Positions 20,042-56,132 of a DNA stretch of 64,000 nt are shown piece by piece (the first letter of the stretch is position 1; each line of letters begins with the position of its first letter). The DNA comes from Lepidodermella squamata (Eukaryota; Animalia; Gastrotricha): contig JBLDXI010000073.1 in the NCBI GenBank assembly GCA_047495785.1, positions 310,001 through 374,000 of the forward strand, read 5' to 3'. Position numbers and translations under genes: made by a program. The notes under the pieces were generated by a model. It worked only from the letters and a program-made list of their open reading frames with translations, was not told where the DNA came from and made no database searches.

Positions 20042-22702
20042 ATGCGCCACCCATTAGCTTCAATAATCCCCTTCCTCGTGCTGACATTCGGAGCCTGCCG
20101 AAACATATCATGCAACCTGAATTTTGATATTGGAGAAAATGTTGTAATTGCTTGTCAAAATAACGAGACCTGGTCCCAGTCTGGTTTATGTGTCCCCAGG
20201 CAGCGAAGGCCAGTAAGTTTACTACAAAGACATGTACAGCCGGAGTAATTTTTGGGGGGTTCTTCTGTCAGCGGAACCAAATTTACGGTGAGCGAAACCA
20301 AATATGCTGTAGCGGAACTAAATTTTGGAATTTTCTAGTAGCCTGAAATCGCTTTTTGGATATCTCTTGCAGGTCAAGATTGGCCACAATAATTCTAGAA
20401 AACTCACCAATGAATTAAGCGCACCATTCGCTATAAGACGAAGTGTTCAGTTCAAAATTCATCCTTGGCCTAAGTTTCGTAGAAATATTCAAAAAATGAA
20501 TTTTGGCATATTTCGACTTTGGTTCCGCTACAGCAAATTTGGTTCCGCTACAGCAAATTTGATTCCGCTCACCGTAAATTTGGTTCCGCTAAAAGATATT
20601 CCGATTTTTGGGTCCCCTTATCCGTATTGATATAAGGAGCTTGCATTCGTTGCGGATTGCGATATGCTGAGATGACCAAGGCTTTTTTAAAAAAGGAAGA
20701 AACATCCAAAAGGTAACTACTTGCGATGTTTTCAGCCTGTTTCCTGCTCCGGTTTCCCTAATCTCTTAGTTTCCGCTTAGTTTCTTGCGGAATCTCAACT
20801 TTCTGATGGCTGTCTGTTCTTGCATTTTAGGTTCGTGAAGTGTACGAGCAGTTGTGGAATGTAACAGCCCTCACGGACGACTTGGAACAGGTGCGGCAAC
20901 TCGTTGCAGAGATCGACGAATCCACTGGGCGCAAATTTGACCCGAACTGGCGCAACCCTAATGAGGTCAACTGTGCTTCTGAGTATGACAAAATGAAAAA
21001 TGGCACCCTGCTGCACCGTGTCATGTGCAATCGGACGCAATCAGACCAGCGGTTACAAATTGCGCAGATCTTCGTGGATCGTGGAGCTGATGTGAATTCC
21101 AGAGAGGAAAAGTATGGCTTGACTGCGTTGATGTTTGCGGCTCGGATAGGGCACATTGAAGTAGTGCGCCTGCTGCTGGATCGCAACGCTGACATCGAGG
21201 CCAAAGATAAAAATGGCTGGACGGCGTTGATTCACACGGCTTGGAAGGGAGATCCTACAACACTCATACTACTCCGATTGTTGTTGGACCGCAACGCTAC
21301 CATCGACGCCAAGGATAACTTAGGCCAAACAGTACTTATGATTGCAGCTCGGATGGTGCAAGTCGAAGTAGTTCGACTGTTGTTGGATCGCAACGCTGCT
21401 ATTGAGGCCAAGGATAACGATGGCAGGACGGCGTTGATGTGGGCGGCTGCGACTGCGATTGAGAAGATCGAAGTAATTCGATTGCTGCTGGATCGCAACG
21501 CCGACATCGAGGCCAAGGATAAAAATGGCTGGACGGCACTAATGGTTGCGGCTAATAATGGACACATTGATGCAGTTCGAGTGTTGTTGGATCGCAACGC
21601 TAACATCGAGGCCAAGGTTAACGATGGTAAAACGTTGTTGATGATTGCGGCTAGGGATAGGAACATTGCAATCATTCTACTGTTGCTGGATCGCATCGCT
21701 GCTATCGAGGCCCAGGATGACACATCGTTAATGTATGCAGCTAGGTATGGGCAAATCGAATTAGTTGGAGTGTTGCTGGATCGCAACGCTACCATCGACG
21801 CCAAGGATGACAATGGCTGGACAGCCTTGACGTGGTCGGCAAGGTATGGGCAAGTCGAAGTAGTCCGAATGCTGCTGGATCGCAACGCTGACATCGAGGC
21901 CAAGGATAATATTGGCTGGACGGCGTTGATGTATGCGGCAGGTAACGGGCGAATCGACGCAGTTCGAGTGTTGCTGGATCGCAACGCTACCATTGACGCC
22001 AAAGATGACAATGGCTGGACAGCGTTGATGTTCGCGGCTTCTTATGGGCACGTCGATGTAGTTCGACTGTTGCTGGATCGCAACGCTGCCGTCGGGGCCA
22101 AGTATGGCTCTGGCATTACGGCGTTGATGTTCGCGGCTTCTTATGGGCACGTCGATGTAGTTCGACTACTGCTGGATCGTATCACTGCTGTCGAGGCTAC
22201 GGCTAACACTGACGGGACAGCGTTGATGTGGGCGGCCAGATATGGGCAAGTTGAAGTAGTTCGATTGCTGCTGGATCGCAACGCTGCAATCGACGCCAAG
22301 GATGACAATGGCTGGAGAGCCTTGACGTGGTCGGCAAGGTATGGGCAAGTCGAAGTAGTCCGAATGCTGCTGGATCGCAACGCTGCAATCGAGGCTAAAG
22401 ATAATATAGGCTGGACGGCGTTGATTTTTGCGGCTAGGTATGGGCAAGTCGAAGTAGTTCGATTGCTGCTGGATCGCAACGCTGCTATCGAGGCTAAGGA
22501 TAGAGATGGCTGGACGGCGTTGATGTGGGCGGCCTGGCATGGGCACGTCGAAGCAGTGCGACTGTTGCTAGATAGAGGCGCAAATAAGAACGTCAGAAAT
22601 TCAGACGGCGATACAGCTCTCGATATCGCAATTTGCCGAAACGATACTGCTGCGGCCTTGCTGAGGACGCGAGGAGCAACTCGTGCAAAGTCATCCTGTT
22701 GA
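20042..22702 (+). CDS. predicted secreted protein: signal peptide + partial CCP + ~17 ankyrin repeats; exons 20042-20212, 20831-22702 (~680 aa)
   Basis: MRHPLASIIPFLVLTFGA signal; ISCNLNF..IACQNNETWSQSGLC CCP half; phase-0 GTAAGT/TTTTAG intron; uninterrupted ANK ORF ending AKSSC. Confidence 0.85.
20265..20600. mobile_element. MITE with AGCGGAACCAAATTT sub-terminal repeats, intronic
   Basis: Inverted arrays at 20270-20326 and 20518-20592. Confidence 0.7.
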
Positions 22703-23498
22703 AAGTTGTAGGCAGTGAATCAGCGATCAGTGATATCACTGATTACCCCTCTAAATTCAGACAGTACTCTTCCCAATGATTTCCGACATTTTCGAGATGC
22801 CGTTTCTTGGGTGTGACAGCTTTAAATTAAATTTAAATAAATTAAATTGTTATCTGCATCAAATCAACCGCTGTTATTACTTATTTGTGTTTCGCTAGTA
22901 GTCAAGTATTCAGTGGCTCAGAAGTTCTGATCGTCCTCTGCGGCCAGGAGATCAGAATTCGAAATTTCAACCATCACTTTCTCCGCACATAAAGGTCGCA
23001 TCAGTAAGAACCAAATGCCAGCTGATAGATCTCTTCTAGGAGAAATTCATTGATATTTTTTCAAATTTAAATAATGAAAGAACTCAAGCATGGTGCGAAT
23101 TACAGGGGTGCTGAAGTGTCGCGACACCCCAGCTCCAGGACTCCAATCAGAAGAAGGCTTAAAAAACCACAGGGGGGGCCCTTTGCTTTCAAAGAAATTG
23201 ATGAATAAGCAGACCAATTGGCGCCCATGGCGTTACACCCTTTTTCTCCTGATTAGTTAGTCTATAGTGATATTATGTCTATGCTGAATCAAACAATATT
23301 CGTCCATTCGTCGTTGAGGAGAACATGTTTACAATGTTGAGCAGTTATTTTAGTGGCTACCAATTCGATTCTCAACATAATTTAAAATTCGGAGCATTAT
23401 ATATTAATGAATGAAACGCGCTTTCAGTGGAGTCGTGGCATACAGAAGATCGATTTAAAATATATTCGAAAAGCTGTGACGCATTTTGAGTTGATTTC

Positions 23499-24916
23499 AT
23501 GATGCCGAAACGACGAAAAAATTACTCACCCGACTTTTTAGCATTCAGGCCCCTTTACATCCCTCTTAAAATTCTGGGCCTACTGCCAAACTGGCCAATA
23601 TACGACTTTGATAACGGCAGTTCAAAGGCATACAAAATCTACGCTGCGACGCTGCAATTCATCGCATGGATAAACGGTGTCCGCATTTTCACGGTTTTCG
23701 TCTGGGTCAATCAATCTAACACGCCCCTTTTCGCTATGTTATATCAAGCGATTACCGGCTGTTATCATTTGACAACAGCTGTGGTAAGGTGGAACCTATT
23801 CATTGGCTGCTGGAAGCGGAAGTTACTGAACCTTTTAACCCTGAAAGACGTACAACAGTCGATTTGCCGCGATGAGATCGCCAGCATAGATTCAATATGG
23901 CCGAAACGCCACTTTCACTTCGTCCTAATCACCCTGACTTTCGTCTTTTGTTGGTTCTATAACGCAGCTCTTGTTTCTTACCTTTTGATAAACAACCGAA
24001 AAGATTTTGGAGTCATGGCCGCTCCTCTCAACCATCTAATCATCGATGATTCTACGTGGAATATAGCCTCTGTCGCTATGTTCATCCCTTTCAGTCTGGT
24101 TGGCGATGGCGGGCTAATGTTTGCAATGTCCTTTTTCACCATGGCCTGCGTTACATTAGGGCGTAAGTTCCGAAACCTCTCGGATGAAATCGGAAAGTAC
24201 GCCAGGCAGAGTTCGATGAAAATTCGCCCATTGTCCGCCCATCAACAACAGGAACAATTTCTATGCTCTGAGATCGAGTTCTTGCAACGTGTCCGAGATC
24301 GGCATTTGTACCTTGTGAGATGTGGCCGCCGTTTAGACAGAGAAATGAGGTTGACAATCTTCGCGAGCCTGACCTACGGTTTCATTGGAACTCTCGGAAA
24401 TCTGTATCAAGCAATTTGGGGAGGTCTCGCGAGTTCCTTTTTGAAGAACCTTGAGAGTAGTTGGCTGGTATATGCCTTTTGGATGCTTATGGCTGCTATC
24501 GGGCCGTCAGCTTACATCTGCCACAACGCTGACCGGGTCAGGGAGAAGTTGTTCACGTTGAGACTGCAATCAAAAGGCACGGCTGTACAGATTCAAGTAA
24601 ATTTTCCTTGTTAAGTAGGAAATGGTTTCTAGCAAGGCATTTTTCAGCTTTCGATGCTGATTGGTCAGGTGACCACGGAACAGGCCTGTCTAAATTATAT
24701 CGGTGTTATGCCACTTAAGAAAGAGACATTCATGGCGGTAAGCTTAAATCGTAATCCTCGTTGCAGCGCACCCAAAATTGTATTTTTTTCTAGCTTCTTG
24801 CTGGCCTGTTGACCTATTTCCTGATAATGATCGACTACATTTCTGGTGAGAAGAGTCGTCAGAATATGCTGGCTTCTGAAGAGGTCTTAAATGCGAGCAA
24901 TCATTCCGCTTTTTGA
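23499..24916 (+). CDS. gustatory receptor-like (GRL / 7TM ion channel superfamily); exons 23499-24596, 24648-24737, 24794-24916 (~436 aa)
   Basis: N-terminal FRPLYIPLKILGLLP, multiple TM helices, C-terminal TYFLIMIDY (GR motif TYhhhhhQF variant), two phase-0 introns near the C-terminus as in GR/GRL genes. Confidence 0.85.
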
Positions 24917-25085
24917 CAATTGTCAATAAATTTAAAAAATAAGTACATCTCGCGTTCGGCGATGATTTCACTTCCCATATCCACGAAACAAAGGATTTGT
25001 CCCCAGTTAACAATTTATTGATAAAACGCCCATTACAGCGCTGGTTCAGTACATTCTACAAGATCAGCTGAGCGATTAAGTGCGA

Positions 25086-26904
25086 TTAATTTTGAGTCAA
25101 GGCTTTGTGAATTTCAGACTTTTTCGATACTAGTCCAGATATCAATCTGAAGGCTGAGATGTAGTCATTTCGGCTTGCATCAAAGTCATTTTGAGCTCCA
25201 TTCTGCAACAAAAACGCCACGATTTCTTCCTTGTCGCCGAGAGCCGCCAAATTCAGAGCGCTATACCCACCTTGGCATCGATCGTTGATTTCTACATGGC
25301 CGTTTTTCAGCAGAGAACGAACTGTATCGAGATGGCCGTTGTAAGCTGCGATCATCAGAGGTGTAAACTTGTAGTCATTTGTTAAATCTTCGTTAGGATC
25401 ACTGCCAAGTTGCAGAAGCAGCTCAACGATTTCAGTCTTACCTAGAAAAAAAGGAAAAAATAATTCCAGATAAGTTTCAAGATTTCGAGAACTATGCGAC
25501 AAAACAGCAACTTGGCAGAACAGCAAATGCGACAAAACAGCAAATTGTTTTTCATTTCTCGACGAATCAACGAAAACTTGTAAGAGCACCGTGCAGTGCG
25601 CGAAGTAGCGGGAAGACTGGGAGTACGGTACTCCCAGTTCGAAAGGTCTCGGCAAGAAAACCCGAAAAAAACCACAGGGGGGACCCTTTGGTCTGCAATT
25701 TCGGGCCAGATAATGCCTGAAAGTACCCCCAACTCGAGCATCCTACTTCGCGCACTGGCACCGTGTTTCTGCTGTTATGTCGCAAGTTGGAAAATCTGCT
25801 GTTTTGTCGCGTTTTGCTGTTTTGGGTATTTGCTGATGTGACGGTGGATATTTTTCCAATTTCATGGGATGTTTTCAGAATATTTTAACATTCCTCATTT
25901 TACAGAATTCTATAAAACCTTTTGAAAAATTACATGAAATTCAAAACAGAGTTTTCGCAATTGTTGAACATTTTCGCTGAATTTTTAGTCGCAAGATTTT
26001 TTATTTTTGTCTTACCCTTTGAAGCCGCATGTGTTAGAGCTGTCCAACCATTCGAGTCCTTTGTATTGATAGCCGCATCCTTCTGAACCAAAAGCCGTAA
26101 GGTCTCTGCATCGCCATGCCTCGCCGCCATTATTAAGGCGGTCTTGCGACTATCGTCCAGCCTTGCATTCACATGCGCCCCTTTCTCTATCAAAAGCCCT
26201 GCAATCCTGGATTGATTATACTTAACAGCTGCTAATAACGGCGTCCAGCCACCCTGGCCTTGAAAATTCACGCACGCCCCACATTGATCGATAAGATACT
26301 CAGCGATTTGCAATTTCCCATGACGGGCGGCGAACATCAAAGGCGACCAGCCATTTTTCGAATCTCCAGCATTAAAATCCGCCCCTTTATCGACCAAATC
26401 CGTAGCCGCATTGAAATCACCACGGCAGCAAGCTTCGATCAATTGCGGGGTCAAACTCGCGTCTTTCACATGATTTCTCAATCGATTCGCCTCGATTAGG
26501 ACGATATCTTCAGGATTCCGGCCAAGTAAATCTCGAACCTCGATGATATTGATAGGCTGCGTACAGGCCGGGCATTGAAATTCGTAACGGCCGTCGGCGA
26601 TTTCGAGCTTCAAATAGCTTTTAATGCAAGAACGGCATGCTCGGTGCTTGCAGGCGACGTTCGTCACGAAAAGTGTTTCGAGGGGCTTGTTCAAGGCCCA
26701 GCAGATGCAGCAGTAGCCTGTTTGGGAGGCAGATAACGGCGGCGTGAAGCTTTCGTCGTCGTATTCCGAATCGGATAGATCGCTCGGCCTTCGAAGGCTG
26801 TCGCTCGAAACCGATGAAGAGCAACTTCCGCCTGATCCATGGTAACGCATCGGCTTCTCAGAGCCAGATGACGCTAATTCGTCCTCGTTCTGCCCGGACT
26901 CCAT
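25086..26904 (-). CDS. RING (RBR RING1-like C3HC4) + ankyrin-repeat protein; exons 26904-26016, 25441-25086
   Basis: CCIC..CKHRACRSCIKSYLKLEIADGRYEFQCPAC followed by ~7 ANK; a phase-1 intron joins HAASKG|KTEIVELLL in frame. Confidence 0.85.
25594..25757. mobile_element. hAT-type MITE (164 bp)
   Basis: TIR CAGTGCGCGAAGTAG; 8-bp TSD GCACCGTG; empty site present in the duplicate at ~9799-9806. Confidence 0.92.
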
Positions 26905-27443
26905 TATTCAGCTGTAAAATGGTTTGAAAATTGTTCTGAATAGCTATCTCGCTAATGTGAGTAGACACTATTGAGATCAATGGGAATCACGGTTCAATGA
27001 GCGTCAAGTGGCAAGCGAGTTTTTGTGCTACGTGTGAATAGCTGCTGGGCTGTAAGAAAAACAACACGCTTTGCACTTCAGAGGCGCTTGCACCTGTTTT
27101 TTATGGTTAATCAATAGATTCACCGTGATTGCTTGCTGTGGTGCGAGGTTCTGACGATCAATGGATCTGGGAAATTATAATTAATCATTCATAACAATCG
27201 AACTTCGAATTAAATCAGTTCTATTATATTTCTTTTTGAAGCAAAAGTTTGGCATACATTCATTTTTCACTCAAATTGGATGCAGCTTGAAGGATGAATA
27301 TTTCACTGGGAATCTTTTGAGTTTTAATTTTCCCTTCGTCCATTTCGAGATCTGTTCAATCGCCGATTTTTGTTATAACAACATATTTACTTAATCAAAA
27401 ATTATAAATCAGATTAAGATGACAAAGGAATAATATATCGAAG

Positions 27444-28999
27444 CTAGTAGGGCATTGTCATTGGTCGCATATATTGAGGTTTCGTCGACTCATCCAACAT
27501 TTTCTGAATCAGAACGCCATCGGCAACAGCTGAGCACACTACGGCGAGAATCCCTATAGCCAAGTCCATTATATCGATAACGCGTGTGCTCATTTTCCCA
27601 AGTTGCAAGATTGTTCGATCGAAGCAACTCGACTTGGCCAATCGAAGTGCTACCATGGTGTACAGAGTTAGAAATGCTGCGATGCCGAGTTTCACTTCAA
27701 CTAAGATTGCAAGGTAAATCGGCTCAGATGTCTTTGGAATCACCCCATATGTCATGCTTCGGATGAAGAGAAACGCGAGGATGACTACAATGTTGAAAAC
27801 AGGACGGTATGCAATTATAGCGGGCATTATCAGGCTTAGAAGTTGGAGCACTGCCAAGATATAGCAAGGCACAAGTACTTGCTGGAGAATGGGACCGGGC
27901 TTGCGCTTGAAGGTCAGGGGAATTCGGCATTCTCCGTAGCATGAAATGCTGCCTTCCTTGTATGTCCATTCAATATTTGGATCTTCCAGACGTTGCTCGA
28001 ATGCGATTGTCGTTTTGTCGCTGCGCATTAGCAAGTCTACCCCGTATAGTATAATAGTGCAGTCGAATGTATCGAAGGGAAACCTTGAAATTTCCAAATT
28101 ATTTGTCATTTCTTCGCACTGAGATTCCAATTTGACTGAAGCTGCCCATGACGAAATGCCAGAGAACATGTTGATTTTAACCGAGGACTCTATTATTGAC
28201 CTGAAAATAGGATAAATTCATCTTTATGCCTTGAAAGCAGAAAAACAGACTAGTTGATGGTTTGGGATTAAGAGGTTGGGGTTGGGGGTAGGTTTAGGGT
28301 TAAGGTTAGGATTGAGGTTAGGATTGAGGGTGAAGTTAGGGTTAGGGTTAGGGTTAGGGTTAGGGTTAGGGTTGAGGTTGAGGGCAAGGTTGCAGCTGGG
28401 GATAGGGCTAGAGCTAGGGATTATGGTTAGGGTTAAGGATAGGGTTAGGGATGGCAGTAGGATTATAACGTTAGGGCTATATTTCATGATTGGATGAATT
28501 TTTCAGTTTTTATCTCCCTAAATTTTTCGCGAACTTACTCTATGACAGCCGCCTTATTAGATACAGCATTCGAGTGGAGTACGCGTGGGTGCCAAACATC
28601 TCCGATGGGCGCATCCATGAAGAAATTACCATAGCGCTTCCATTCGCAGCCGGTCGTGATGTTGGCAGCCGCAAGATTTTTGCAGAATGCCGCCAAATCA
28701 CACGGCCAGCCCCAGTGAACGTTCATTTCAGCGGTGAGTGATATCGACTGGCTGTTTGTGTCGATCTCGAGGGGTTTTCTCAACTTCAAGTCTACCTTGA
28801 CTTCCATCAGCGATTCCACCATCGGGTCTTTTTTGGCGCTGATCAGAATGTTCGGCAGCCATTTGTAAAAGGCAAAGTGACAGGAATAGCGGAAAACTTC
28901 GTGGATTACAGCTAAATCGTTGTATTTCAATTCAGCGGGGAATACAGGTGAAATTGCTATGACGAAGAGAGCCGCAATCGAAGCTGTTGGACATTTCAT
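27444..28999 (-). CDS. divergent pentameric ligand-gated (Cys-loop) ion channel subunit; exons 28999-28539, 28200-27444
   Basis: Signal peptide, VWHPRVLHSN (loop A WxP), C..RFPFDTFDC, EW, FKRKP pre-M1, M1 VPCY, M2-M3 PKTS, four TM helices; phase-2 intron in frame. Confidence 0.88.
28277..28480 (+). repeat. degenerate interstitial (TTAGGG)n-like tract, intronic
   Basis: Perfect TTAGGG units at ~28336-28371 flanked by variants. Confidence 0.85.
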
Positions 29000-30104
29000 T
29001 TTCAGATCTGATCACTTTTCCTACTTTAATCTTAAAATATTGAAACCTATGATGATAGGTGTTTGAAAAGCTAGTCGAGTCGAAACAGTTCTGCGGAAAA
29101 TAATAAGCTACCTGTTCTCAGTAAATACAGCGAGGAGTCAGCTCGGCGGGGGTTTTCATTTCCGTTCAAATAATCCCTCGAGCGCAAACGCAACATGTTC
29201 GATTGTTATCTAAAATATTGGAAATCTCAGGAAATGAGCACCTGTTCGTTGCTCAGTTTTCCATTTTCCCCGTTCATTTTCACATAGCCGCTTTCGCCTT
29301 GAATGAGAGATCGACGGTGTTTGCTTGAAAATCGGCGTTAAAAGCATAAATATCAAAGTGTTTATCTATTGAGTGTTGAGTGAGCATCGACAGCCAAAGC
29401 GTGGGTTGGATAGAATCATATAAAATCTGCAGTTCTAACATTTTGTTCAGTCGATTGCAATGAAACCTAGTCGTTCCTGGCGCGGAAGAACCCGCACTTT
29501 TTTGCATTGTACTGATGATGAAACCATCAGAGTACGAAATTCACTGATTTGCACAAGCAAGTATGCAGAAAGTGAACGCACACAACGCAGGTAAATATAT
29601 GTTATTTTGGGAATCTGGAGCTTCTGATTCCAAAAATCACTAATCGATAATAGACTCGAATTCAGAAAAGCGATAAGATTCAAAATCCCCGCACCTCACT
29701 TGACTGATGGTGAGAATGGTGTTACTGTGTTACCACCTGGGCTCCGCTGGACTCCTCACTCAACGCACCATCCATCATCCATCATCATCCCCGACAACGA
29801 ACCGACAAATAACGCAGCCCTGGATCATCAGATTGCACTATATTTGATGTCATTGCCTACGTCGAAGCATGGTGAGCCGACGAAATTATACATGACTCAT
29901 GAGATGCGAGCCCGACAGAAAGCCCTCGTCGTTCTTTGTCAGTTAAAAATCGCTGACAGCCTCTCAAATATAAATTTTACAGATTTGTTCCGCTAGGGAA
30001 GCACACAAGAAAAGGGCCAAAAGAGAAAAAAACACTCATAAAACCGATTTTATTAAATATCACAAAAAATTGCTCTCGAGGCCAATATCCATCGTGACAT
30101 CAAT

Positions 30105-30438: not shown

Positions 30439-33400
30439 TCAGCAGGATGACTTTGCTCCAATTGCTCCTCGCGACCTCAGCAAATTGTCCACAGTGCTTC
30501 CGCAATTCGCAAAATCAAGAGCTGTCTCGCCGTCTAAATTTTTGACATCCTTATTCGCACCTCTATCTAACAAAAGTCGAACTACTTCGACGTGCCCAAA
30601 CCGTGCCGCATGCATCAACGCCGTTGTGCCATCGTTATCACTGGCCTCGATGTTAGCGCTGCGATCTAACAAAAGTCGAACTACGTCAACTTGCCCATAC
30701 TTAGCCGCCCACATCAACGCCGTCCAGCCATCGTTATTCTTGGCTCCGATTGCAGCTTTGCGATCCAGCAACATCCGAGATACCTCGACTTGACCATACG
30801 CAGCCCCGTGCATCAACGCCGTCCAGCCATTGGCATCCTTGGCGTCGATGGCAGAGTTGCGATCCAGCAACAGTCGAACTGCTTCGAGTTGCCCACTCTT
30901 AGCCGCCCACATCAACGCTGTCATGCCATAAAGAGCCTTTACGTCGATGGAAGCGTTGCGATCCAGCAACAGTCGAGCCACTTCGACTTGCCCATATGCA
31001 GCCGCATGCATTAACGCAGTCATGCCATCGTTATCCTTGGCGTCGATGCTAGCGTTGCGATCCAGCAACAGTCGAACTACGTCGATGTACCCATACGCAG
31101 CCGAATACATCAATGCCGTCCTGCTATTGCCATCTTCTCTGTAATTCACATCAGCTCCTCGTTCAATGAACAACTTTGCAATTTGCAGTCGCTGGTCTGA
31201 TTGCGTCCGAATGCAAGTGACGCTGTGCAGTAGGGTTCCATTTTTCATATGATAGTTCGTACAGGATAATTGCTTTGAGTTGCGCCAGTTCGGGTCGAAT
31301 TTGCCGCCGGTTGATTCGTCAATCTCCGCAACGAGTTGCCGCACCTGCGCCAGATCGTCCGTGTTAGCTGTTACATTCCACAACTGCTCGTACACTACAC
31401 GGACCTAAATGCAAGAACAGACAGACAGCTCAGATTCAGCTACATATACAGTAGAAGCTCTATAATCCGGACACCATCGGTCGCGGAAAAGCGTGTTCAG
31501 AGAGCGAAGTACCGTTAGGAATGGTAGGGATCATCCCTAACAGTCACGTTGGTCCGTACAGTGAGCTCATTCTCAGAGGGGGGACCCTTCTGTCAATTGT
31601 TCAAGTCCCTAGTCCCTACCAATTTCGCTCAGCCTAACCAACCAGCCCATCTCACCAGGCCCCTGAACCGCCCATCATCGTGAGATCCCAACTAAGCCAT
31701 TCTCGAAAATGTTCCCAAATTTTGAGCAGTGGCAACTAGAATTTCGTTAGAAATTTCAGTAACCACTCGGCCCGTCTTAAAACTGCAATTTCATTCAAAA
31801 TCGCAATTTCCCATTGTAGTTCCGTTTCAGCCCGCCGAAGGTTTTGGTTTTGTTTCTTGTTTCAACTACGTTTCGATTTTGTGGGGAATGATCTTTCAAG
31901 AAAATTTACAGGTCTTCGCTGCCTCGAGACGCAAAGACCAGGTTGAGACCAGGTTGCGTTCGAGAGGCACGTTATCGCAGTGTTGCCTTGAATCTGAAAT
32001 TTCAGATTGCACGATATGCTTCGGTTTGCTCCGAAGATTGACAGACCAGAAGATATGTTACCGTTTTGAATCGTGGGAACGGGACCGCAGCCTTAACAAC
32101 ACGTATTACAGAAAATAAGAGGCGTATAGGAGATGCTTTGAATCCTTACCTACCATTAATTACCGAAGGGGAGCACCTTCCATTTATTACCGGTCGAAAT
32201 GGAGGTAGACAAGTGGCAAAATTGACAGGGTTGGAATATGTATAACCAGGGTTGCATTTAACGCTAACAGCCCCTCCTCTTTCCACTGCAGTTCCAGGCT
32301 TTAAAACTTCGCCAGTATCTTCCGAAGTTTCTGGATCCACACGAGTCACAAATCCCGCAGATACGTTAGGCACTGGGCAAGACTGCTCTAGCGTACTTCT
32401 ACTGTCAGAGACTACTAGTGTCTGGCTGCGAACATCAGTGTTCTCCGAAATCCAATCGAGAACTTTGCAGACTCTGCTGTAGATACCAGGAGTGTATCCC
32501 TTGCATGACGCGTCGCCATTAGATATTATGCCGAGAATGTAAGTCTTCCCGGATTGCAAGCACATGAGAGGGCCTCCGGAATCCCCGTAGCAGACGTCGC
32601 TATCATAGGCGGCTAAACACATCTTCGAGTCAGTGATAGTGACCGGATCTGAGCGACCGCGGGAATACTCCAGCGAGCAATTTCGGTAGGATCGAACTTG
32701 AAGATCCAGCTTTCTCGGGATATCAGATAGTCTGGCTAAAATAGGAGGAAGCGATAAGGAAGGTAGAGGGCTGTGACTATGTTAAATTTCGGAACATACT
32801 GTATGCAAAGTGACCCCAGCCAGCCGCCACCGCTGAATCACATCCGTCGATCGAATTGGCGGTGATAGGGTTGGCTCGGCACATTGTAGCCGCGTCGGGT
32901 AGACAAATCGGTTTGATCTGCTGTGAGAATCTGGAAACTGGGGTCGTCAGTCGCAAGAGAGCGAAATCAAAGTCGTAGAAGTTCTGACTCCCGTTGTACA
33001 GCGGATGGACCAAAGCAGGCAGCGACACTACAGACTCGTAAGAGCCCGCCTCAGACCTCAAACTGATATTATGGCGACCTAGCATCGCTTTGATACTGTA
33101 AAAAGGACAAATATACATGCAATTTAGTCAGGTAAATTTGCAGTTCTACGTACAAAATGGGGGTCTCTCCGGTATTCCAAACGCAATGAGCAGCTGTGAT
33201 GAGCCATTGCTTCGAGATGAGGGAAGCTCCGCAGTAAGAAGCTGACGATTCGCCGCTTTTGTATATCTCAAGGAAGACCTAAGCGACAAACATCCTGTTT
33301 TCGTTGAATTACATTAACATGGAAGTGAAACAGACCAGCCACGGGTATTCGTTGGGTCCTGCTGGCTGGCTGCCTGGGCCCCGTGATTTCGCTGTAGGGT

Positions 33401-33491
33401 TCACAACACCGCATTCGAAATTATCCTGCGCAACGACTACTCCGCATACCAGTACAAAGAAGGCGATTACTGAAGCTGTTTCGTGATGCAT
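30439..33491 (-). CDS. secreted S1 serine protease - CCP - CCP - ankyrin-repeat fusion; exons 33491-33336, 33278-33154, 33095-32800, 32735-32154, 32091-31910, 31404-30439 (~768 aa)
   Basis: Signal peptide; TAAHC, DFALL, DVCYGDSGGP; CCP1 CPVP..KCNPGY..TC..RC; CCP2 CGPVPTIQNG..ISC..TC..WSQPGLC; ~8 ANK; all five GT-AG introns are phase-compatible with no stops. Confidence 0.88.
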
Positions 33492-34156
33492 TTTGAACAT
33501 TTTTCAAGAAAAGCATCTACTAACAAAGGCTTCATAGAACCTTCTTCGTATGTGCGTAAACGTGCAGCTTTCGTATACCTACGTATAACGTTTTTGTGTA
33601 TATTTCTCTGTTTGTCATAGTGATGAGATACATCTAACGCAAAATTCAAAGCCCGTGTTGGTAATACTCAGCGAAGAAAAATCTGAGGCTAGGTTTGAAA
33701 CATCCGGTTAAAATACCAGAACTTGAAAACCTGAAGGTAAGAAAATATGACAATTGTCGACACAGCTTCCTTTGTCTGTTTTTATTTATGCACTTAGACT
33801 TAGAAAATTCACACCATCAAACACGTCTGCAGTGAAACCCCGATTCCCCATCCTCTTCGGTGTCATGAAAGTCGAAAGCACCTACCAGCTCGAAAACTGT
33901 CAAATCATACTAATGCTAGACTTTTACCCTTGAACCTAAAAGCAAATTACGATCTGTAGGATCAACACAGCCGAACTTCATTCATTATTACGTTAGGCTC
34001 TTAAAAGTACGCCTGAATGGGTCATCAAAGTGGTTTTTTGGCGCTTCGCTAAGGCTCATCACAGGAGTTTAAGGAGTTTAAGGTTTCAGGTGGAGCGATA
34101 AAGGCTCACGCAGCAGGTATTATCTATCGCAGTTGGGTTAAATCACGAATCATGAA

Positions 34157-34935
34157 TCAACATTTTTTTACATCGTTCCAAAGTATTCGCGCTGAAATAT
34201 AGGTTTCGTCGACTCGTCCAACATTTTCTGAAACAGAACGCAGAACGCCGTCAGAAGCTGCTGAACACACGACGGCGAGAACCACTATTGCCAAATCCAT
34301 TATATCGATAACGCGCGTGCTCATTTTCCCAAGTTGAAAGATTGTTCGATCGAAGCAGCTCGACTTTGCCAATCGAAGTGCTACCATGGTGTACAGAGTT
34401 AGAAAAGCTGCGATGCCGAGTTTCACATCAACCAAGATCGCAAGGTAAATCGGCTCAGATGTCTTTATGGAATCGCCTCATACATCACGCCTCGGATGAA
34501 GAGAAGCGCAAGGAGGATAACAATGTTGAAAACAGGACGGTATGCATTTGTAGCAGGCATTATCAGGCTCAGGAGTTGAAGCACTGTTAAAATATAGCAA
34601 GGCATAAGTACTTGCTGGAGAATGGGGCCGGGCTTGCGCTTGAAGCTTAGCGGCATTTCGCACTGTCCGGAGCCTGCAATGACGCCTTGTTTGTATGTCC
34701 ATTCACTATTTGCATCTTGGTCGCGTTGCTCGAATGCGATTTTAGTCTCGTCTGGACGGAGGTCGAGATCTACTCCGCTTAGTATATAATAGTGCAGTCG
34801 AATGTATCGAAGGGAAACCGTGGAATGTCGACTTTATTTGACATTTCTTCTCATTGAGTTTCCAATTTAATCGTAGCTGCCCATGACGAAATGCCGGAAA
34901 ACATGTCGATTTTGACCTTGGACTGTTTTATCGTC
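34157..34935 (-). pseudogene. Cys-loop channel exon-2 pseudogene
   Basis: Paralogous to 28200-27444; the first Cys-loop Cys codon is TGA; several frameshifts; no exon 1 upstream. Confidence 0.88.
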
Positions 34936-35259
34936 CTGAAATGGGATAAACGATCATTAAACGATCATTTCGCGAACAATTTGATAGTGAGCAACAGAGT
35001 ATTTTCATAGTTGTCTGGTGTCTGTTTGTTTTAAATTCTGGGAAAAACCCTGAACCCTACGGAAAACATGCTTGTAAATCCTAATTTTGAATCAGTTGAA
35101 GAAGTTGAAGATTTCAACTGATTCAGAATTAGGAAGAAATTGAAAGGAAAAAAGTCATTTGCGCGTGGTAAACATTTAGGAATAGAAAGAAGACAAATCT
35201 GCATGATTTCAGTCAACAGTTCAGCTAGGTTCATTTTTTTACGTCAGGCATAATTTCAG

Positions 35260-36435
35260 TCAACAGGATGACTTTGCTCGTCTTGCTCCTCGCGCCCTCA
35301 GCAAGTCGGCCGCGGCGGTTTTATTCCAGCAAATTGCGATATCGAGAGCTGTCTTGCCGTCTGAATCTCTAGCATCCTTATTTGCACTTCTATCCAGCAA
35401 CAGTCGAACTGCTTCGACTTCCCCATACTTAGCTGCAATCATCAGCGCTGTCTCGTCATTTTTATTCTTGGCCTCGATGGCAGCTTTGCGATCCAGTAAC
35501 ATTTGAATTGCTTCCAAATGCCCAAGCCTTGCTGCCCACATCAACGCCGTCTCGCCATTGTTATCCTTGGCCTCGATGTCAGCCCTGCGATCCAGCAACA
35601 GTCGAACTACGTCAACTTGCCCATTCCGAGCCGCATAAATCAACGCCGTCACGCCACTGTTATCCTTGGCCTCGATGGTGGCATTGCGATCCAGCAACAG
35701 GCGAACTGCTTCTTGCCCGTACACAGCTGAATACATCAACGCCGTCCAGCCATTGTCATCTTTGACGTCAATGGTAGCGTTGTGATCCAGTAACATTCGA
35801 ACAGATTCGACGCGCCCTCCCTTAGCCACAATCATCAACGTCGTCAAGCCACCGTTTACCTTGGCCTCGACGTCAGCATTGCGATCCAGCAACAGTCGAA
35901 CTACTTCTTCTGCTCCATACAGAGCTGCATATAGCAACGCCGTCATTCCATAATGAGTTTTGGCCTCGATGAAAGCTTTGCGATCCAGCAGCAGTCGAAC
36001 TAATTCGACGTGCCCAGAAACAGCCGCAAACATCAACGCCGTTGTGCCATCGTTATCCTTGGCCTCGATTGCAGCGTTGCGATCCAGCAACATGCGAGCC
36101 AATTCATTCTGCCTATTCCCTGCCGCATACGTCAATGCGGTTAAGCCATTGTAATCTTCCCTGTAATTCACATCAGCTCCACGGTCCATGTACAGCTGAG
36201 CAATTTGCACTCGCTGGTCTGATTGTGTCTGATTGCACATAACACGGTACAGCAGGGTGCCATTTTTCATTTTCTCATACGCAAGCACAGCACAGTTGAC
36301 CTTATTAGGGTTGCGCCAATTCGGGTCGAATTTGCCGCCAGTGGATTCGTCGATCTCTGCAACGAGTTGCCGCACCTGCGCCACGTCGTCCGTCAAGGCT
36401 GAAACATTCCACAGCTGGTCGTACACTTCAAGAAC
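35260..36435 (-). CDS. intact orphan ankyrin exon (~10 repeats) of the protease-ANK family
   Basis: Phase-0 acceptor CACTTAG|GTT CTT GAA GTG (VLEVYDQLWN), open to AKSSC*; I found no upstream exon of its own in 36440-38420. Confidence 0.7.
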   Translation of the reverse strand, partial: VLEVYDQLWNVSALTDDVAQVRQLVAEIDESTGGKFDPNWRNPNKVNCAVLAYEKMKNGTLLYRVMCNQTQSDQRVQIAQLYMDRGADVNYREDYNGLTALTYAAGNRQNELARMLLDRNAAIEAKDNDGTTALMFAAVSGHVELVRLLLDRKAFIEAKTHYGMTALLYAALYGAEEVVRLLLDRNADVEAKVNGGLTTLMIVAKGGRVESVRMLLDHNATIDVKDDNGWTALMYSAVYGQEAVRLLLDRNATIEAKDNSGVTALIYAARNGQVDVVRLLLDRRADIEAKDNNGETALMWAARLGHLEAIQMLLDRKAAIEAKNKNDETALMIAAKYGEVEAVRLLLDRSANKDARDSDGKTALDIAICWNKTAAADLLRARGARRAKSSC

Positions 36436-38424
36436 CTAAGTGTAGCAAACAAAGATTTAAATTCCTGAATTACTGAAAAAGAAACTGAAGCAAGTAATTA
36501 GTTGGAAACTGGAGAGGAACCGGCACTTAACCAATAAACGTTCTCCGTTCTCCGGCACGTGTATCGCCTTGATACTTATATAAATCCCTGGTTAGATGTC
36601 ATTTTCTACGAGTAGGGAAATATGAAAGTGGCAACTTTCCTTGTACTCTCGTAATACAAAGTTTGCCGCAGTTTAACGAGGCTTCAACGACAAAGCTTCC
36701 TAAAACGTCGCAAAAAACGGCAAGCAAGATCCACGGTAAGAACTAAGAACACGCTAAACGCTAAATAACGCTGCAGTATAATCACGGCAAAAAATAAGTG
36801 AAAGCAATGTTTCCGTACGGTCACCGATGTTAAAACTTGCCATTCCAAACTGGTACTTGGGTGGGCTACGGTCTGATAGTTTTGATCCGTAAAAACACGG
36901 TAAAATTTTATCAAGTTGGCTCGGGACCAAAAAGGAAAAAGACGGCACATTTGATTGAAATGACAGCTCGTAAAACAACGAAAAATGCGCGGCAACGACA
37001 GCGGCAAAACCCACGGTTAAAAAGGCTTGCTATCCACACCGGTGATCTCATTAATACGTCCGAATATCCGCACTATAGCAAAGCTGTAGGTTGCCAAGCT
37101 TGCCATCCTTGTTGGTGCACGTTTAGTGCCACTATTAGGGTAACGCCATTAGCTAGGTACTGCCGTTGCACGATGTTTTGGTGAGGTTACTGCTAATCTT
37201 GATCGCGGTATCGCGGCATTTCAGAGCAGTTCGAGACCGTCCCAGCAGTGTAAAGATAGAACTATGTACTAGTATTGCTGTCATCAGCCAGGTTCCCCCC
37301 GGCGCTACTGCATCAGCAAAGCTGTTTGCTGTGGCCATTTTTCAATCACGCACCGTGCCGGTAAAGCGGAACAATGGAATTATTTAGATCGAGTGATGCA
37401 GATAACACCGTGTTCAGCCTATTTTTGACTATCCCCAGATTACCAAACTATCACCTTGATAAGCTGATAATGGTGAAAACCGCACATTTCTATCTATCAC
37501 CGTTAGGAAGGTTTTTAGGGTGGGCCACTGCCTAAATAACCGCACCTATGCTGATCACCCTGGAACGCTCATAATCGTGCGCAGTAAACATCATAGCCTA
37601 TTTTGACTACGCGGAATCGATTGGTTTTATCTCGATGCCAATGGCTCGAATACCCCTTTTCGCTGTTCCGCACTTACCTGCCTAGGGACTGGAAAGCGCA
37701 CTCTGTGTTTGAGGAGGGACAGGCGCAGGAGGGGCAGTATCGCACCTATTTGAGTATTACCTCAAAATGCTCCCCATAAATCAGGCTACCTGGTGATAGG
37801 TAGACCATTATACTTCCGTTTTGCAGGTCAAAGGTCACACGTGAACAAAACGTGTGATCGAAACACTAAACTTTTAAGTTGTTGCTTGCTGTTAAGTTGG
37901 TGGTAGTTTCGTCATTTCGTCATTTCGTCAATTCCAAAACTTCCAAAAGACTGAAGAAACTTAGAAAAATAAAAGAAATGATGTGAGCAAGATTCGAACT
38001 ATCAACCTCTGGTTTCGAGTGCTAGTGCTTGACAACAATCAAACAGTTGTTTTTCCGAAAATTTGATGGGTGCATACGAAAAACCGCGCTCTGGCGTGGT
38101 CTATGCTAGAAGGTGCTTCAAACTGCAAACCGCTCAGCTAGGTAAATTCGCTACATATTTTAGTGCAGATGATCCTTAACAATTGTGTTCCGACTTAACG
38201 GGTGTTGCCACTTGCCTCCTTTTACCCTTCATGTCAGAAAAGAAGTGGGCACAAAGAGGACAAAGTCTGAGACAGTTCGCGGAAGACACTAGTGGGAAGG
38301 CAGAGGGATGGAATTATCACCAGCTGATGATTTATCGGCAAATAATAAGGATAAATTGTAATTTGCACTTGAGTAAAGAAAATTCAGGAATAGAAAGATG
38401 ATAAATCTGCGTGATTTCATTGAT

Positions 38425-41400
38425 TCAACAGGATGACTTTGCTCGACTTGCTCCTCGCGACCTCAGCAAATCGGCCGTGGCTGTATAATTTTTACAAATC
38501 GCCATATCGAGAGCTGCGCTGCCGGCTGAATTTTTGACATCCTTATTTGCACCTCTATCCAGCAACAGGCGAACTACTTCGACTTTTCCATTCGCAGACG
38601 CAATCATCAACGCCGTTGAGCCTTCAATATCCTTGGCCTCGATATTAGCGTTGCGATCCAGCAACAGTCGAACTACTTCGGCCTGCCCTAACTCAGCCGC
38701 AAGCATCAACGCCGTATAGCCATTTTTGTCCCTGGCGTCGATAGCAGCGTTGCGCTCCAGTAACAGTCGGGCGACTTCCACTTGCCCAGTCCCAGCCGCA
38801 TACATCAACGCCGTCCAGCCATTTTTGTCCTTGGCGTCGATAGCAGCGTTGCGCTCCAGTAACAGTCGGGCGACTTCCACTTGCCCACTCTCAGCCGCAC
38901 ACATCAACGCCGTCCTGCCATTGTCATCCGTGGAATTCACATCAGCGCCACGATTTACGAGCAGCTGAGCAATTTGGAATACCTGATCTGATTGCAACTG
39001 TTTGCACGTAACACTGTGAAGCAGGGTGCCATTCGCAGTAATAATTTCTTTTGTTGCGCCAGTTCGGGTCATACCTGCCGCCAGTGGATTCGTCGATCTC
39101 CGCAACGAGTTGCCGCACCTGCGGAACGTCGGCCGTAGAGGCTGTTGCATTCCACAACTGCTCGTACACTTCAGTGAGCTAAACGCAAGAACAGGCATAC
39201 ATCAGCCAGTTGAGATTCATGCAACTCGTGCAACTCATGCACTTTGTTGATCTTCCAAGAAAACATACAGGTCTTTGCTGCCTCGAGACGCAAAGACCAG
39301 GCTGAGACCAGGTTGCGTTAGAGAGGCACGTAATGAAAGCATTTCCTCGAATCTCAAAATTCAGGCTGCATGATATGCTTTGGTTGGATCCGACGCTTGC
39401 TGGACCAGGGGATACATATATCCGTTTAGAATTGTGGGTGGAGATCCACAACCTATATGCGAAGATTATCTTAGAAGAACGAGCTTATATGAACTGTTAC
39501 CTACTTGACGGGTTGCACCTTCCATTAATCACCGGTCGAAATGGAGGTAGGCAAGTGGCAAAATTGACAGAGGTGGAATATGTATAACCAGGGTTGCATT
39601 TAACGCTAACAGCCGCCCCTTTTTCCACTGGAGTTCCAGGCCCTAGAACTTCGCCAGTATCTTCTGAAGTTTCCGGATCCACGCGGGACACAAATCCCCT
39701 GGATTAGTAGGGTACTGGGCAAGACTGCGCCGGGGTACTTGTCTGGCTGCGAACATCTGTGTTGTCTGATATCCAATCTAGAACCTTACAGACTCTGCTG
39801 TAGATGCCTGGAGTGTATCCTTTACATGACTCATCCCCATTGGATATTATGCCGAGAAGGTAAGTCTTCCTCGATTGCGAACACATGAGAGGGCCCCCAG
39901 AATCACCGAAGCAGACGTCGCTGTCATCGGCGGCTAAACACATCTTCGAGTCAGTGATAGTGACCGGATCTGAGCGGCCGCGGGAATACTCCAACGAGCA
40001 ATTTTGGTAGGATCGAACTTGAAGATCCAGCTTTCTCGGGATCTCAGATAGTCTCGCTAAAACACGAGAAAGAGATACAATATGTTTTCGATTTTCAAGA
40101 TCAATGATCAAAGTCCGCTTGGTCACATGGGATGAACAGCTAGTTCTGGGGTTGTGCTTTTTCCGTTGTTTCGTTGTTTCGTATATTTTCGTCATCTCAC
40201 AAAAAAATTGAAGAAAGAGAACAATGTAGCAAAGGAGGATTCGTACCCGGGATCTTAAGGATTCGAACCATGGGTTGGGGGTACTATACAATGGGAGCCT
40301 TCCGATTCTAAACTGATTCAAAACTGAAAACGCTTTTATTTGTCTTTTTTTTGTTTCGTATATAAAATTGCCTGAAGATTATGACCACCACGACTTGCCA
40401 CTATTGTGCAGTGGTCCAGAGTCCAGAGTTCGAAAACTCTTTTTGCTTTATTTCTTCTGTTTCGTCGTTCGTTTTTTCTTATTGCTATTTCATTTTTTAA
40501 CGTTCACTTTTTAAACTCGAATGTTTTTGCATTTGCAGTAATCTAAGGCTTTAAGAGGTCTCTTGTATCAGACTAAAAAAATATTGAACGAGATTGGGTT
40601 CGAACCTCGGCCGCCTTCCATCACTCAGTGATTTTCACTTTTAAGCAACAGAAGGCAACTGTTTTTTTGTTTTCACTATTTAGTTCATATTTTTTCTTTG
40701 ATGTGAGACTTTTTCTATCAAGTAAAAATTCGGGGAGGGGGTTTGGTGATGTTAAAGTACGAAACATACTGTATGCAAAGTGACCCCAACCAATCGCCAC
40801 CGCTGAATCGCATCCATCGATCGAATTCGCGGTGGTGGCGTTGGTTCGGCACATTGTAGCCGCGTCGGGTAAACAAATCGGTTTATCTGCTGCGAGAATC
40901 TTGGAACTGGGGTCGTCAATCGCAGCAGTGCGAAATCAAAGTCGTAGTAGTTCTGACTCCCGTTGTACAGCGGATGGACCAAAGCAGGCAGCGACACTAC
41001 AGACTCGTAAGAGCCCGCCTCAGACCTCAAACTGATATTATGGCGACCCAGCATCGCTTTTATCCTAAATAACAGGCCGAAAATAACATGGGAAATAGGG
41101 AAAGGACCCACAAAATAGGGGTTTCCCCGTTATTCCAAACGCAATGAGCAGCAGTGATCAGCCATTGCTTCGAGATGAGGGAAGCTCCGCAGTAAGACGC
41201 CGACGATTCGCCGATTCTGTATATCTCAATGAGGACCTGCGACAAACATCCTGTTTCTGTACAATTACATCGAAATGAAACAGACCAGCCATGGGTAATC
41301 GTGCGGTCCTGCTGGTTGACTGCCAGGACCTTTTATTTTGGTTGCTGTAGGGTTCTCAGCGCCGCATTCGAAATTATCTTGACTACTAACGACTACTCCG

Positions 41401-56018: not shown

Positions 56019-56132
56019 GTTACAAGGCGTTTGAAGTGATATGTGGTCGAGTGAAACTACTTTGTATAGCGATTTCTACTTCCTGTTTTTACTTTTTTCC
56101 CTCTTTTGCTATGAATAATGCGGATGAATGAT

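What the first reader, a model, noticed from the sequence alone, without database searches (positions are those of the whole stretch)
20831..39178. Four ANK cassettes with Cys-pair caps, glycosylation sequons and DARPin-like hypervariability
Seen: the four terminal exons (20831+, 31404-, 36435-, 39178-) share a phase-0 acceptor. Each has a constant N-cap (YEQLWN...DPNWRN..C..NGTLL...C) and C-cap (TALD...C...RGA..AKSSC*), so two Cys at each end and almost none inside. N-x-S/T sequons are conserved (WNVT/WNAT/WNVS, NGT, and NDT/NKT/NYT in three copies). Repeat number differs (~17, 8, 10, 6). The framework VEVVRLLLDRNAxIxAKD is fixed while residues in D-x-x-G-x-TALM-x-AA-x-x-G vary. Established: these are the beta-turn and helix-1 binding-face positions randomised in DARPins, and disulfide caps are how extracellular LRR receptors such as VLRs are closed. 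Inference: a natural library of extracellular ANK binders.
Basis: partly seen in the sequence, partly recalled or inferred. Interest (0 to 1): 0.85.

Follow-up and report, generated by a model that had tools for sequence, protein, structure and literature searches.

The report
Secreted cysteine-capped ankyrin-repeat exons
Four related end-exons of an unidentified small animal encode ankyrin-repeat coils, normally an inside-the-cell binding module. Two sit in intact genes behind an export signal, so they probably work outside the cell, but their variable binding face is no more variable than in ordinary intracellular ankyrin genes next door.

Summary
The four cassettes are real. They are 99-nt-period ankyrin (ANK) terminal exons with one shared phase-0 acceptor, a conserved N-cap and C-cap, and exactly four conserved cysteines.

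- **Status of the copies.** Only two lie in intact gene models. c2 is signal peptide, trypsin-like protease, two Sushi modules and ANK. c1 is signal peptide, half a Sushi module and ANK. c4 belongs to a pseudogene with four disabling lesions, one inside the N-cap. c3 is intact and constrained, but no 5' exon was found.
- **Location.** No membrane span or hidden exon separates Sushi from ANK, so a secretory or extracellular location is well supported by sequence. No RNA run was available.
- **Cysteines.** The two inner cysteines both sit at repeat position 13, in the first full unit and in the last unit. Their partners lie in the flanking loop and at the C-terminal residue. Two end-stapling disulfides are plausible but could not be measured.
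- **Variability.** Variation does peak at positions 2, 3, 5, 10, 13 and 14. Kinase-linked ANK arrays without a signal peptide in the same window show the same profile and the same dN/dS of about 1-2. Sequon density is also the same there.

"Extracellular ANK" is therefore supported; "hypervariable library" is not shown. Notes of this scan report the same family elsewhere in this genome.

The parts
20042..20212 (+). c1 exon 1. It holds the start codon, a signal-peptide-like N-terminus and the C-terminal half of a Sushi module with 4 Cys. It ends ...RQRRP before a GTAAGT donor in phase 0.
   Evidence: Read directly. Partial Sushi match, E 0.0018. Homologous to the 5' end and the Sushi-2 exon of c4 and c2.
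20831..22702 (+). c1 ANK terminal exon: N-cap, 15 internal repeats and a C-cap ending AKSSC then TGA. Intact.
30439..31404 (-). c2 ANK terminal exon: N-cap, 6 internal repeats and a C-cap. Intact. The AF2 model with a 5-row alignment has mean pLDDT 92.7 and forms one continuous ANK solenoid.
31910..33500 (-). c2 exons 1-5: signal peptide, trypsin-like protease and two Sushi modules. Exons are 33500-33336, 33278-33154, 33095-32800, 32735-32154 and 32091-31910. The last ends ...SRQRRP at a phase-0 donor.
   Evidence: Searches give 1350 nt with no stop. Pfam Trypsin and Sushi.
35260..36435 (-). c3 ANK terminal exon: N-cap, 8 internal repeats (one is 32 aa) and a C-cap. The reading frame is intact, but no upstream exon was identified.
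   Evidence: No homologous or signal-peptide-like exon in 36436-38424. Cap dN/dS 0.31-0.36 against c1 and c2.
38425..39178 (-). c4 ANK terminal exon: 4 internal repeats, broken by a frameshift in the N-cap loop, with one extra interior Cys.
39269..41453 (-). c4 upstream exons (signal peptide, protease, two Sushi modules) with a 1-nt deletion near 40884, an in-frame TAA at 39706-39704 and a 2-nt insertion near 39416. This is a pseudogene.

Best explanation
The four cassettes are paralogous 3'-terminal exons. Each encodes a complete, self-capped ankyrin solenoid made of:
- a helical hairpin plus a degenerate ANK unit as N-cap;
- 4-15 near-consensus 33-residue repeats, whose number changed by unequal exchange in 99-nt register;
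- a last ANK unit with a 9-10-residue tail as C-cap.

In the intact genes the exon is spliced in phase 0 behind secretory-pathway modules. In c2 these are a signal peptide, a trypsin-like protease and two Sushi modules. In c1 they are a signal peptide and half a Sushi module. The solenoid is therefore made in the ER and most likely exported (inferred from gene structure; no transcript was seen).

Four invariant cysteines probably form two local disulfides. Each would link Cys at repeat position 13, in the first full unit and in the last unit, to a Cys in the adjoining loop or at the C-terminal residue. This would staple the two ends, where ankyrin stacks start to unfold (inferred).

The concave-face residues at positions 2, 3, 5, 10, 13 and 14 differ between repeats and copies, as in any ANK array. 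They probably give each protein its own ligand, so the array would serve as the targeting arm of the protease (c2) or as a stand-alone secreted binder (c1). Copy 4 is a dead gene. The usage of copy 3 is unknown.
For: - **Exon limits and paralogy:**
- **ANK identity and fold:** Pfam. AF2 mean pLDDT 92.7. Foldseek TM 0.83 to ankyrin-1 over 310 columns.
- **Secretory context:** c2 has a 450-codon open upstream model with Trypsin and Sushi matches and a phase-0 junction. c1 has a signal peptide and half a Sushi module with a GTAAGT phase-0 donor. There is no hydrophobic span beyond the signal peptide. No in-frame hydrophobic exon lies in the last intron, which is about 90 nt in c4. The ANK exon has no in-frame ATG near its start, yet the N-cap is under purifying selection, with dN/dS 0.21-0.36 among c1-c3.
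- **Cysteines:** the count is even. There are 20 in the mature c2 upstream part, 4 in c1 exon 1 (8 in the whole c1 model) and 4 in every intact ANK exon. The loop Cys is the only invariant residue in an N-cap loop that otherwise varies in sequence and length.
- **Caps as weak points of ANK stacks:** PMC8683736.
- **Sequons:** at two cap sequons the N and S/T are kept while the middle residue changes.
Against: - No RNA run holds the locus. The only run found is DNA, so no splice junction was observed.
- No Cys-Cys distance could be obtained, because model coordinates are not exposed.
- The C-terminal residue has pLDDT of only about 60, so the last Cys could equally form an intermolecular bond.
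- Interior Cys absence (0 of 957 residues) is not significant against the matched cytosolic repeats (3 of 1023, p=0.25).
- Sequon density equals that of the cytosolic control.
- No homologue of the caps was found in 1.84 billion representative proteins, in a word-index search or in metagenome contigs, so there is no cross-species support.
- c3 has no identifiable 5' exon.
Confidence: 0.6

Rival explanations
1. A true diversified recognition library. The face positions are under diversifying selection, and the family acts as a variable extracellular receptor or opsonin repertoire, by analogy with VLRs and DARPins.
For: - Face-position dN/dS is 1.30-1.59 with the global dS as denominator.
- One recent repeat pair, c4_r1 and c4_r2, differs by six replacements, at positions 2, 5, 10, 13, 14 and 33, and one synonymous change. 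Positions 15-32 are identical between the two repeats.
- Summed contig depth over the N-cap and repeats is about 15-37 times the single-copy level, which hints at many close copies elsewhere.
- Notes of this scan claim more than 100 such genes (untested here).
Against: - The signal-peptide-less kinase-ANK control shows the same entropy profile (r=0.69) and a face dN/dS of 1.7-2.0.
- The confidence interval for the a-priori DARPin set includes 1.
- With the face codons' own dS, the ratio is 0.8-1.1.
- The other recent pair, c1_r8 and c1_r13, has no face change.
- The striking pair lies in the pseudogene and was picked after looking at the data.
- Nothing here suggests somatic assembly.
Confidence: 0.15
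2. The ANK arrays are ordinary intracellular ankyrin domains. The apparent fusion to secretory exons would be an artefact of reading neighbouring genes as one. The cap cysteines would then be free, or the terminal one lipid-modified.
For: No transcript evidence was obtained. ANK domains are overwhelmingly cytosolic (general knowledge). c3 has no secretory exon upstream. Interior Cys scarcity and sequons do not distinguish these arrays from the cytosolic ones.
Against: - The exon lacks a start codon, yet its first 42 codons are strongly conserved.
- The same Sushi-to-ANK phase-0 junction is kept in three gene copies. In c1 it survived a deletion that removed the protease but kept the signal peptide in frame.
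- The last intron of c4 is about 90 nt and has no room for a promoter plus a first exon.
Confidence: 0.12
3. The family in this window is largely decaying, and the pattern has no present function.
For: c4 carries four lesions. c3 is an orphan exon. At c4's lesion density, an intact 1.2-kb exon would still occur with a probability of about 0.06 (my estimate). c1 has irregular repeats with insertions and deletions.
Against: c1 (680 codons) and c2 (771 codons) are fully open. Cap dN/dS is 0.21-0.36 among c1-c3 and higher for pairs with c4. Framework dN/dS is 0.33.
Confidence: 0.08

Closest known systems
DARPins and consensus-designed ankyrin repeat proteins
   Same: - 33-residue repeats in the same register, with a fixed framework and dedicated N- and C-capping units.
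- Variation at positions 2, 3, 5, 13 and 14.
- PDB sequence and fold matches to DARPins and to ANK-N5C.
- A C-cap of the G-x-TALD-IA type.
   Different: - These are natural sequences.
- Position 33 is fixed as K.
- Positions 10, 16 and 29 also vary.
- Asn replaces the usual Gly at position 27.
- The caps carry cysteines and sequons, which DARPins lack.
- The variation pattern is shared with cytosolic arrays of the same genome, so it is not evidence of a library.
LRRNT/LRRCT disulfide caps of extracellular LRR proteins (VLR, TLR, Slit)
   Same: A solenoid used outside the cell, with cysteines confined to the two capping modules. This comparison rests on general knowledge.
   Different: Here there are two Cys per cap, not four. 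The fold is different, the disulfides are unproven, and each exon is complete in the germline with no sign of somatic assembly.
Latrotoxins (spider venom proteins with long ANK arrays)
   Same: They are animal ANK arrays that act outside the producing cell. Alpha-latrotoxin, alpha-latrocrustotoxin and delta-latroinsectotoxin are among the PDB sequence matches.
   Different: The latrotoxin N-terminal domains are absent. These genes have a classical signal peptide with a protease and Sushi modules instead. The ANK match is generic.
Toxoplasma RON9
   Same: A signal peptide, ankyrin repeats and a Sushi module in one secretory-pathway protein (PMC3299665).
   Different: RON9 is apicomplexan, has PEST repeats and a C-terminal membrane span, and has no protease. 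No sequence relationship was found.
Complement-type mosaic serine proteases (C1r/C1s/MASP, Limulus factor C)
   Same: A secreted trypsin-fold protease combined with CCP/Sushi modules and a separate recognition part.
   Different: The domain order is inverted, with the protease at the N-terminus. There are no CUB or EGF domains. The usual IVGG activation N-terminus is replaced by GPGS after an Arg. The recognition part is an ANK array.

Membership tests
Ankyrin repeat superfamily (Pfam Ank, Ank_2) | Tandem 33-residue helix-turn-helix-loop repeats that match the ANK profiles and fold as a solenoid | tested here: met
   Ank_2 E-values of 1e-75 to 1e-153. AF2 mean pLDDT 92.7 with paired helices every 33 residues. 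Foldseek TM 0.83 to ankyrin-1.
Secreted / extracellular protein | An N-terminal signal peptide, no membrane span, and companion domains that are extracellular | tested here: met
   Hydrophobic N-termini with small residues at -1 and -3 in c1 and c2, and no other hydrophobic 19-mer above 1.65. Trypsin and Sushi domains. No hidden exon. This is a heuristic only; no SignalP run and no transcript.
Secreted / extracellular protein | Transcript or protein evidence that the ANK exon is joined to the secretory exons | not testable with these tools
   Only one run holds the locus, and it is DNA.
Disulfide-capped solenoid (LRRNT/LRRCT-like logic) | Cap cysteines conserved and paired within each cap | tested here: inconclusive
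   All four Cys are conserved in all four copies, including within a variable loop. Distances could not be measured because no coordinates are exposed.
DARPin-like variable library | Variation confined to the binding-face positions on a fixed framework | tested here: met
   Entropy of 2.3-3.1 bits at positions 2, 3, 5, 10, 13 and 14, and at most 0.6 bits at positions 4, 6, 8, 12, 21, 23-26 and 28; other framework positions lie in between.
DARPin-like variable library | Face variation beyond that of ordinary ANK arrays, or dN/dS clearly above 1 | tested here: not met
   The control kinase-ANK arrays have the same profile (r=0.69) and a face dN/dS of 1.72, against 1.30 (0.89-1.93) in this family.
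VLR-type somatically assembled receptor | An incomplete germline gene flanked by donor cassettes that are copied in | tested here: not met
   Each exon is a complete capped array with its own acceptor and stop codon. No partial cassettes carrying the cap motifs occur elsewhere in the window.
Complement-type CCP serine proteases | An N-terminal CUB/EGF/CCP region followed by a C-terminal protease domain | tested here: not met
   The order here is protease, Sushi, Sushi, ANK. No CUB or EGF match was found.

The most novel reading that the evidence does not exclude
This animal may have turned the ankyrin solenoid into an extracellular recognition module. On this reading, disulfide-stapled and glycosylated ANK arrays of variable length and face would serve as exchangeable C-terminal targeting cassettes on complement-like proteases, and as free secreted binders. 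That would be an ANK-based counterpart of LRR- or Ig-based recognition systems, encoded by a large lineage-specific family.
Probability: 0.25. Interest if true: 0.85.

Novelty: new variant of a known kind. Interest (0 to 1): 0.6.

Why it matters
Ankyrin repeats are treated as an intracellular module. I know of only scattered secreted examples, such as latrotoxins and RON9, and a full-text search found no paper using the phrase 'extracellular ankyrin repeat'.

A germline family that puts capped ANK arrays behind a signal peptide, with cysteines only in the caps, would show how a cytosolic solenoid is adapted to the oxidising secretory pathway. It would also offer natural designs for disulfide-stabilised caps, which is relevant to DARPin engineering.

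The negative result matters as well. A 'fixed framework, variable face' pattern and a dN/dS of about 1-2 at face codons are generic to homogenised ANK arrays. They should not by themselves be read as an immune-type library.

Tried and rejected
- **Homologue searches for the N-cap.** All came back empty: the word-index search, the exhaustive phmmer search of 1.84 billion representatives, which returned only generic ANK hits to residues 50-94 such as a bacterial ANK protein, and metagenome contigs.
- **RNA evidence.** Only one run holds the locus and it behaves as DNA, with contigs spanning introns. Its single joint (30832 to 31284, side 22 nt) is too weak to count as repeat-number polymorphism.
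- **Single-sequence AF2.** This gave pLDDT below 50 in the caps. A 5-row alignment fixed that, but coordinates are not exposed, so the Cys-Cys distance test could not be done.
- **Tree-based counting of codon changes.** I used disjoint sequence pairs instead.
- **Sequon enrichment.** Rejected as evidence, because the cytosolic controls have 1.1-2.1 sequons per 100 aa against 1.1-1.5 here.
- **Interior Cys depletion.** Weak: p=0.25 against the matched control and 0.001 against the pooled ANK genes of the window.
- **A hidden membrane-span exon in the long last introns.** None found. The extra intron length in c1 includes a 62-nt inverted repeat.
- **The AKSSC-like peptide in the neighbouring membrane-protein gene.** It is not shared at the DNA level.
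- **A 5' exon for c3.** None found, either homologous or signal-peptide-like.
Full report
**What is there.** The window is animal DNA with short introns of 57-64 nt and GC of about 0.38-0.49. Four long open frames of ankyrin repeats lie at 20831-22702 (+), 30439-31404 (-), 35260-36435 (-) and 38425-39178 (-). I call them c1 to c4.
- Each starts directly after a pyrimidine-rich ...ttag acceptor, in phase 0.
- Similarity between copies ends at a TGA stop.
- The N-cap DNA motif and the last 14 coding nucleotides each occur exactly four times in the window, against 0-0.1 expected.
- TRF reports 99-nt arrays of 13.1, 5.6, 7.1 and 3.7 copies.
- A profile built from clean repeats tiles the exons into 15, 6, 8 and 4 internal 33-residue repeats.

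**Correction to the observation.** Copy 4 is broken. The stretch YEQLWN...DPNWRN is in one frame and NGTLLH onward in another, with 19 nt between them. Its upstream protease and Sushi exons carry three further lesions:
- a 1-nt deletion near 40884;
- an in-frame TAA at 39706-39704;
- a 2-nt insertion near 39416.

The c4 unit is therefore a pseudogene. It also holds the only interior cysteine of the family.

**Gene context.**
- *c2.* Upstream of c2 I could join five exons (33500-33336, 33278-33154, 33095-32800, 32735-32154, 32091-31910) into 450 open codons. They encode a hydrophobic signal-peptide-like N-terminus and a trypsin domain. Reading the sequence, this domain has the His, Asp and Ser motifs and an Asp at the S1 position. 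Two Sushi modules follow (Pfam). The last exon ends ...SRQRRP at a phase-0 GT donor, which matches the phase-0 ANK acceptor.
- *c1.* This copy has a single upstream exon (20042-20212). It encodes a signal-peptide-like N-terminus fused to the last half of a Sushi module, and ends ...PRQRRP before GTAAGT. Its 5' part is homologous to the 5' end of the c4 and c2 genes. c1 is therefore a protease-less derivative that kept the export signal in frame.
- *Whole models.* They are 680 and 771 codons long without a stop. Neither has a hydrophobic 19-residue window above 1.65 apart from the signal peptide.
- *Last intron.* It is 618 nt in c1, 505 nt in c2 and only about 90 nt in c4. No in-frame AG...GT segment with a membrane-span-like stretch exists in any of them.
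- *c3.* It has no homologous or signal-peptide-like exon in the 2 kb up to c4.
- *Start of translation.* The ANK exons have no start codon near their 5' end. Yet the first 42 codons are the most conserved part, with dN 0.05-0.09 among c1-c3. Translation must therefore enter from an upstream exon.

No RNA run holds the locus, and the one run found behaves as genomic DNA. All splicing here is inferred.

**The caps.** AF2 with the five window sequences as alignment gives mean pLDDT 92.7 and pTM 0.88 for the c2 exon.
- It predicts a helical hairpin (residues 2-32), a loop with short beta bridges, and then regular helix pairs every 33 residues to residue 311.
- Foldseek aligns 310 columns to ankyrin-1 at TM 0.83.
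- The 'N-cap' is therefore the array's own capping repeat pair. The 'C-cap' is a normal terminal ANK unit of the G-x-TALD-IA type plus a tail.
- Placed in the repeat register, the second and third cysteines both fall at position 13, the end of helix 1, in the first full unit and in the last unit.
- The first cysteine is the only invariant residue of a 6-15-residue loop that otherwise differs in sequence and length between copies. The fourth is the C-terminal residue.
- Cysteine numbers are even throughout: 20 in the mature c2 upstream part, 4 in c1 exon 1 and 4 per intact ANK exon.

Two local staples at the ends fit the known behaviour of ankyrin stacks, which unfold starting from their caps (PMC8683736). 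I could not measure the distances, because coordinates are not exposed. The last residue has a pLDDT of only about 60, so an intermolecular bond for the terminal Cys remains possible.

**Is the variability special?** Entropy over the 33 internal repeats peaks at positions 5 (3.08 bits), 13, 14, 10, 2 and 3, and also at 16 and 29.

I then applied the same analysis to 31 repeats of three neighbouring ANK arrays at 50-58 kb. These have no signal peptide and lie downstream of protein-kinase exons on the same strand (Pfam Pkinase).
- Their entropy peaks at positions 1, 2, 3, 5, 10, 13 and 14. The two profiles correlate (Pearson 0.69, Spearman 0.55).
- I ran Nei-Gojobori counts on disjoint nearest pairs, with the global synonymous distance as denominator. 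I take the DARPin library positions (2, 3, 5, 13, 14, 33) from my own knowledge of Binz et al. 2003. For that set the family gives dN/dS 1.30 (bootstrap 0.89-1.93). The remaining positions give 0.33.
- The cytosolic control gives 1.72 (0.95-3.16) and 0.39.
- All-pairs estimates for the family are 0.9-1.35 at face codons, with dS of 0.5-0.9 between repeats.
- One recent pair in the pseudogene differs only at positions 1 (synonymous), 2, 5, 10, 13, 14 and 33. The other recent pair shows no face change.

The face is therefore unconstrained or mildly diversifying, exactly as in ordinary ANK arrays of this genome. It does not single out this family as a library.

**Sequons and cysteine scarcity.**
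- Sequon density is 1.1-1.5 per 100 residues here and 1.1-2.1 in the cytosolic control, so density carries no information.
- The modestly suggestive point is that the first cap sequon (WN[VA][TS]) keeps N and S/T in all four copies while the middle residue changes. The C-cap sequon does so in three of the four copies.
- Absence of interior Cys (0 of 957) is not significant against the matched control (3 of 1023, p=0.25). It is significant only against the pooled other ANK genes of the window (p=0.001).

**Evolution.**
- Cap dS between copies is 0.24-0.47, so these are not recent duplicates.
- Cap dN/dS is 0.21-0.36 among c1-c3 and 0.36-0.61 for pairs with c4, as expected for a pseudogene.
- c1 shows a recent internal duplication: repeats 8 and 13 are 95% identical.
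- Summed contig depth in the DNA run rises from about 80 to about 1300-3000 over the first N-cap half and the repeats. This is a rough hint of many close copies elsewhere.
- Notes of this scan on other pieces of the same genome describe the same architecture, with about forty protease-linked copies and more than a hundred Sushi-ANK genes. I did not test those numbers.
- No relative of the caps was found outside this genome.

**Verdict.** The structural observation holds, apart from the dead copy 4. The secretory location of the ANK solenoid is well supported by gene anatomy in c1 and c2, but it lacks transcript or protein evidence. The disulfide caps are plausible and untested. The 'DARPin-like hypervariable library' inference is not supported beyond what any ANK array shows.

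Known parallels are latrotoxins, Toxoplasma RON9 (PMC3299665), LRR caps and DARPins. None is a relative, apart from the generic ANK similarity of latrotoxins and DARPins. A full-text search found no paper using the phrase 'extracellular ankyrin repeat'.

Noticed in passing
window 31910-31927, 20195-20212, 39269-39286: A conserved basic motif, (S/P)RQ(R/Q)RP, ends the Sushi-2 exon right at the junction with the ANK exon in c2, c1 and c4. The attached protease has an Asp at the S1 position, so this could be a processing site that releases the ANK array.
   Followed up: no
window 33336-33400: The c2 protease lacks the usual IVGG activation N-terminus. The sequence after the Arg reads GPGS, although the His, Asp and Ser motifs are present. 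Activation may be non-canonical.
   Followed up: partly
window 28274-28450: An interstitial array of about 29 degenerate GGTTAG units (TTAGGG-type, telomere-like motif, 69% matches) lies between two ORFs of a membrane-protein gene.
   Followed up: no
window 27444-28999 and 34157-34656: A multi-pass membrane-protein gene lies downstream of c2, and a partial duplicate of its hydrophobic part lies downstream of c3. The duplication unit therefore included the ANK gene and its neighbour. Pfam gave no match for the hydrophobic part.
   Followed up: partly
window 50020-60168: Three kinase-linked ANK arrays of the TPLH type. Some repeats are 100% identical between genes at the DNA level, pointing to very recent duplication or conversion. 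They served as the cytosolic control.
   Followed up: partly
window 20264-20325 vs 20535-20596: A 62-nt inverted repeat, 90% identical, inside the c1 intron, flanked by 20-21-nt tandem repeats. It is probably a small inserted element that accounts for part of the longer intron.
   Followed up: no
window 45531-47273: A different ANK gene of 580 codons with 8 cysteines and only one sequon. Another note of this scan calls it a second secreted ANK family. I did not examine it beyond Pfam.
   Followed up: no
window 25086-26904: A RING-finger plus ANK gene on the minus strand, between c1 and c2. The window as a whole is unusually dense in ANK genes of several unrelated architectures.
   Followed up: no
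window 17104-19041: A 645-codon ORF of a non-LTR retrotransposon reverse transcriptase lies just upstream of c1.
   Followed up: no
window 38352-38419 vs 35144-35211: The first 70 nt or so after the stop codons of c4 and c3 are 79% identical. The duplicated unit therefore included the 3' flank, which fits a tandem duplication of the terminal exon.
   Followed up: partly
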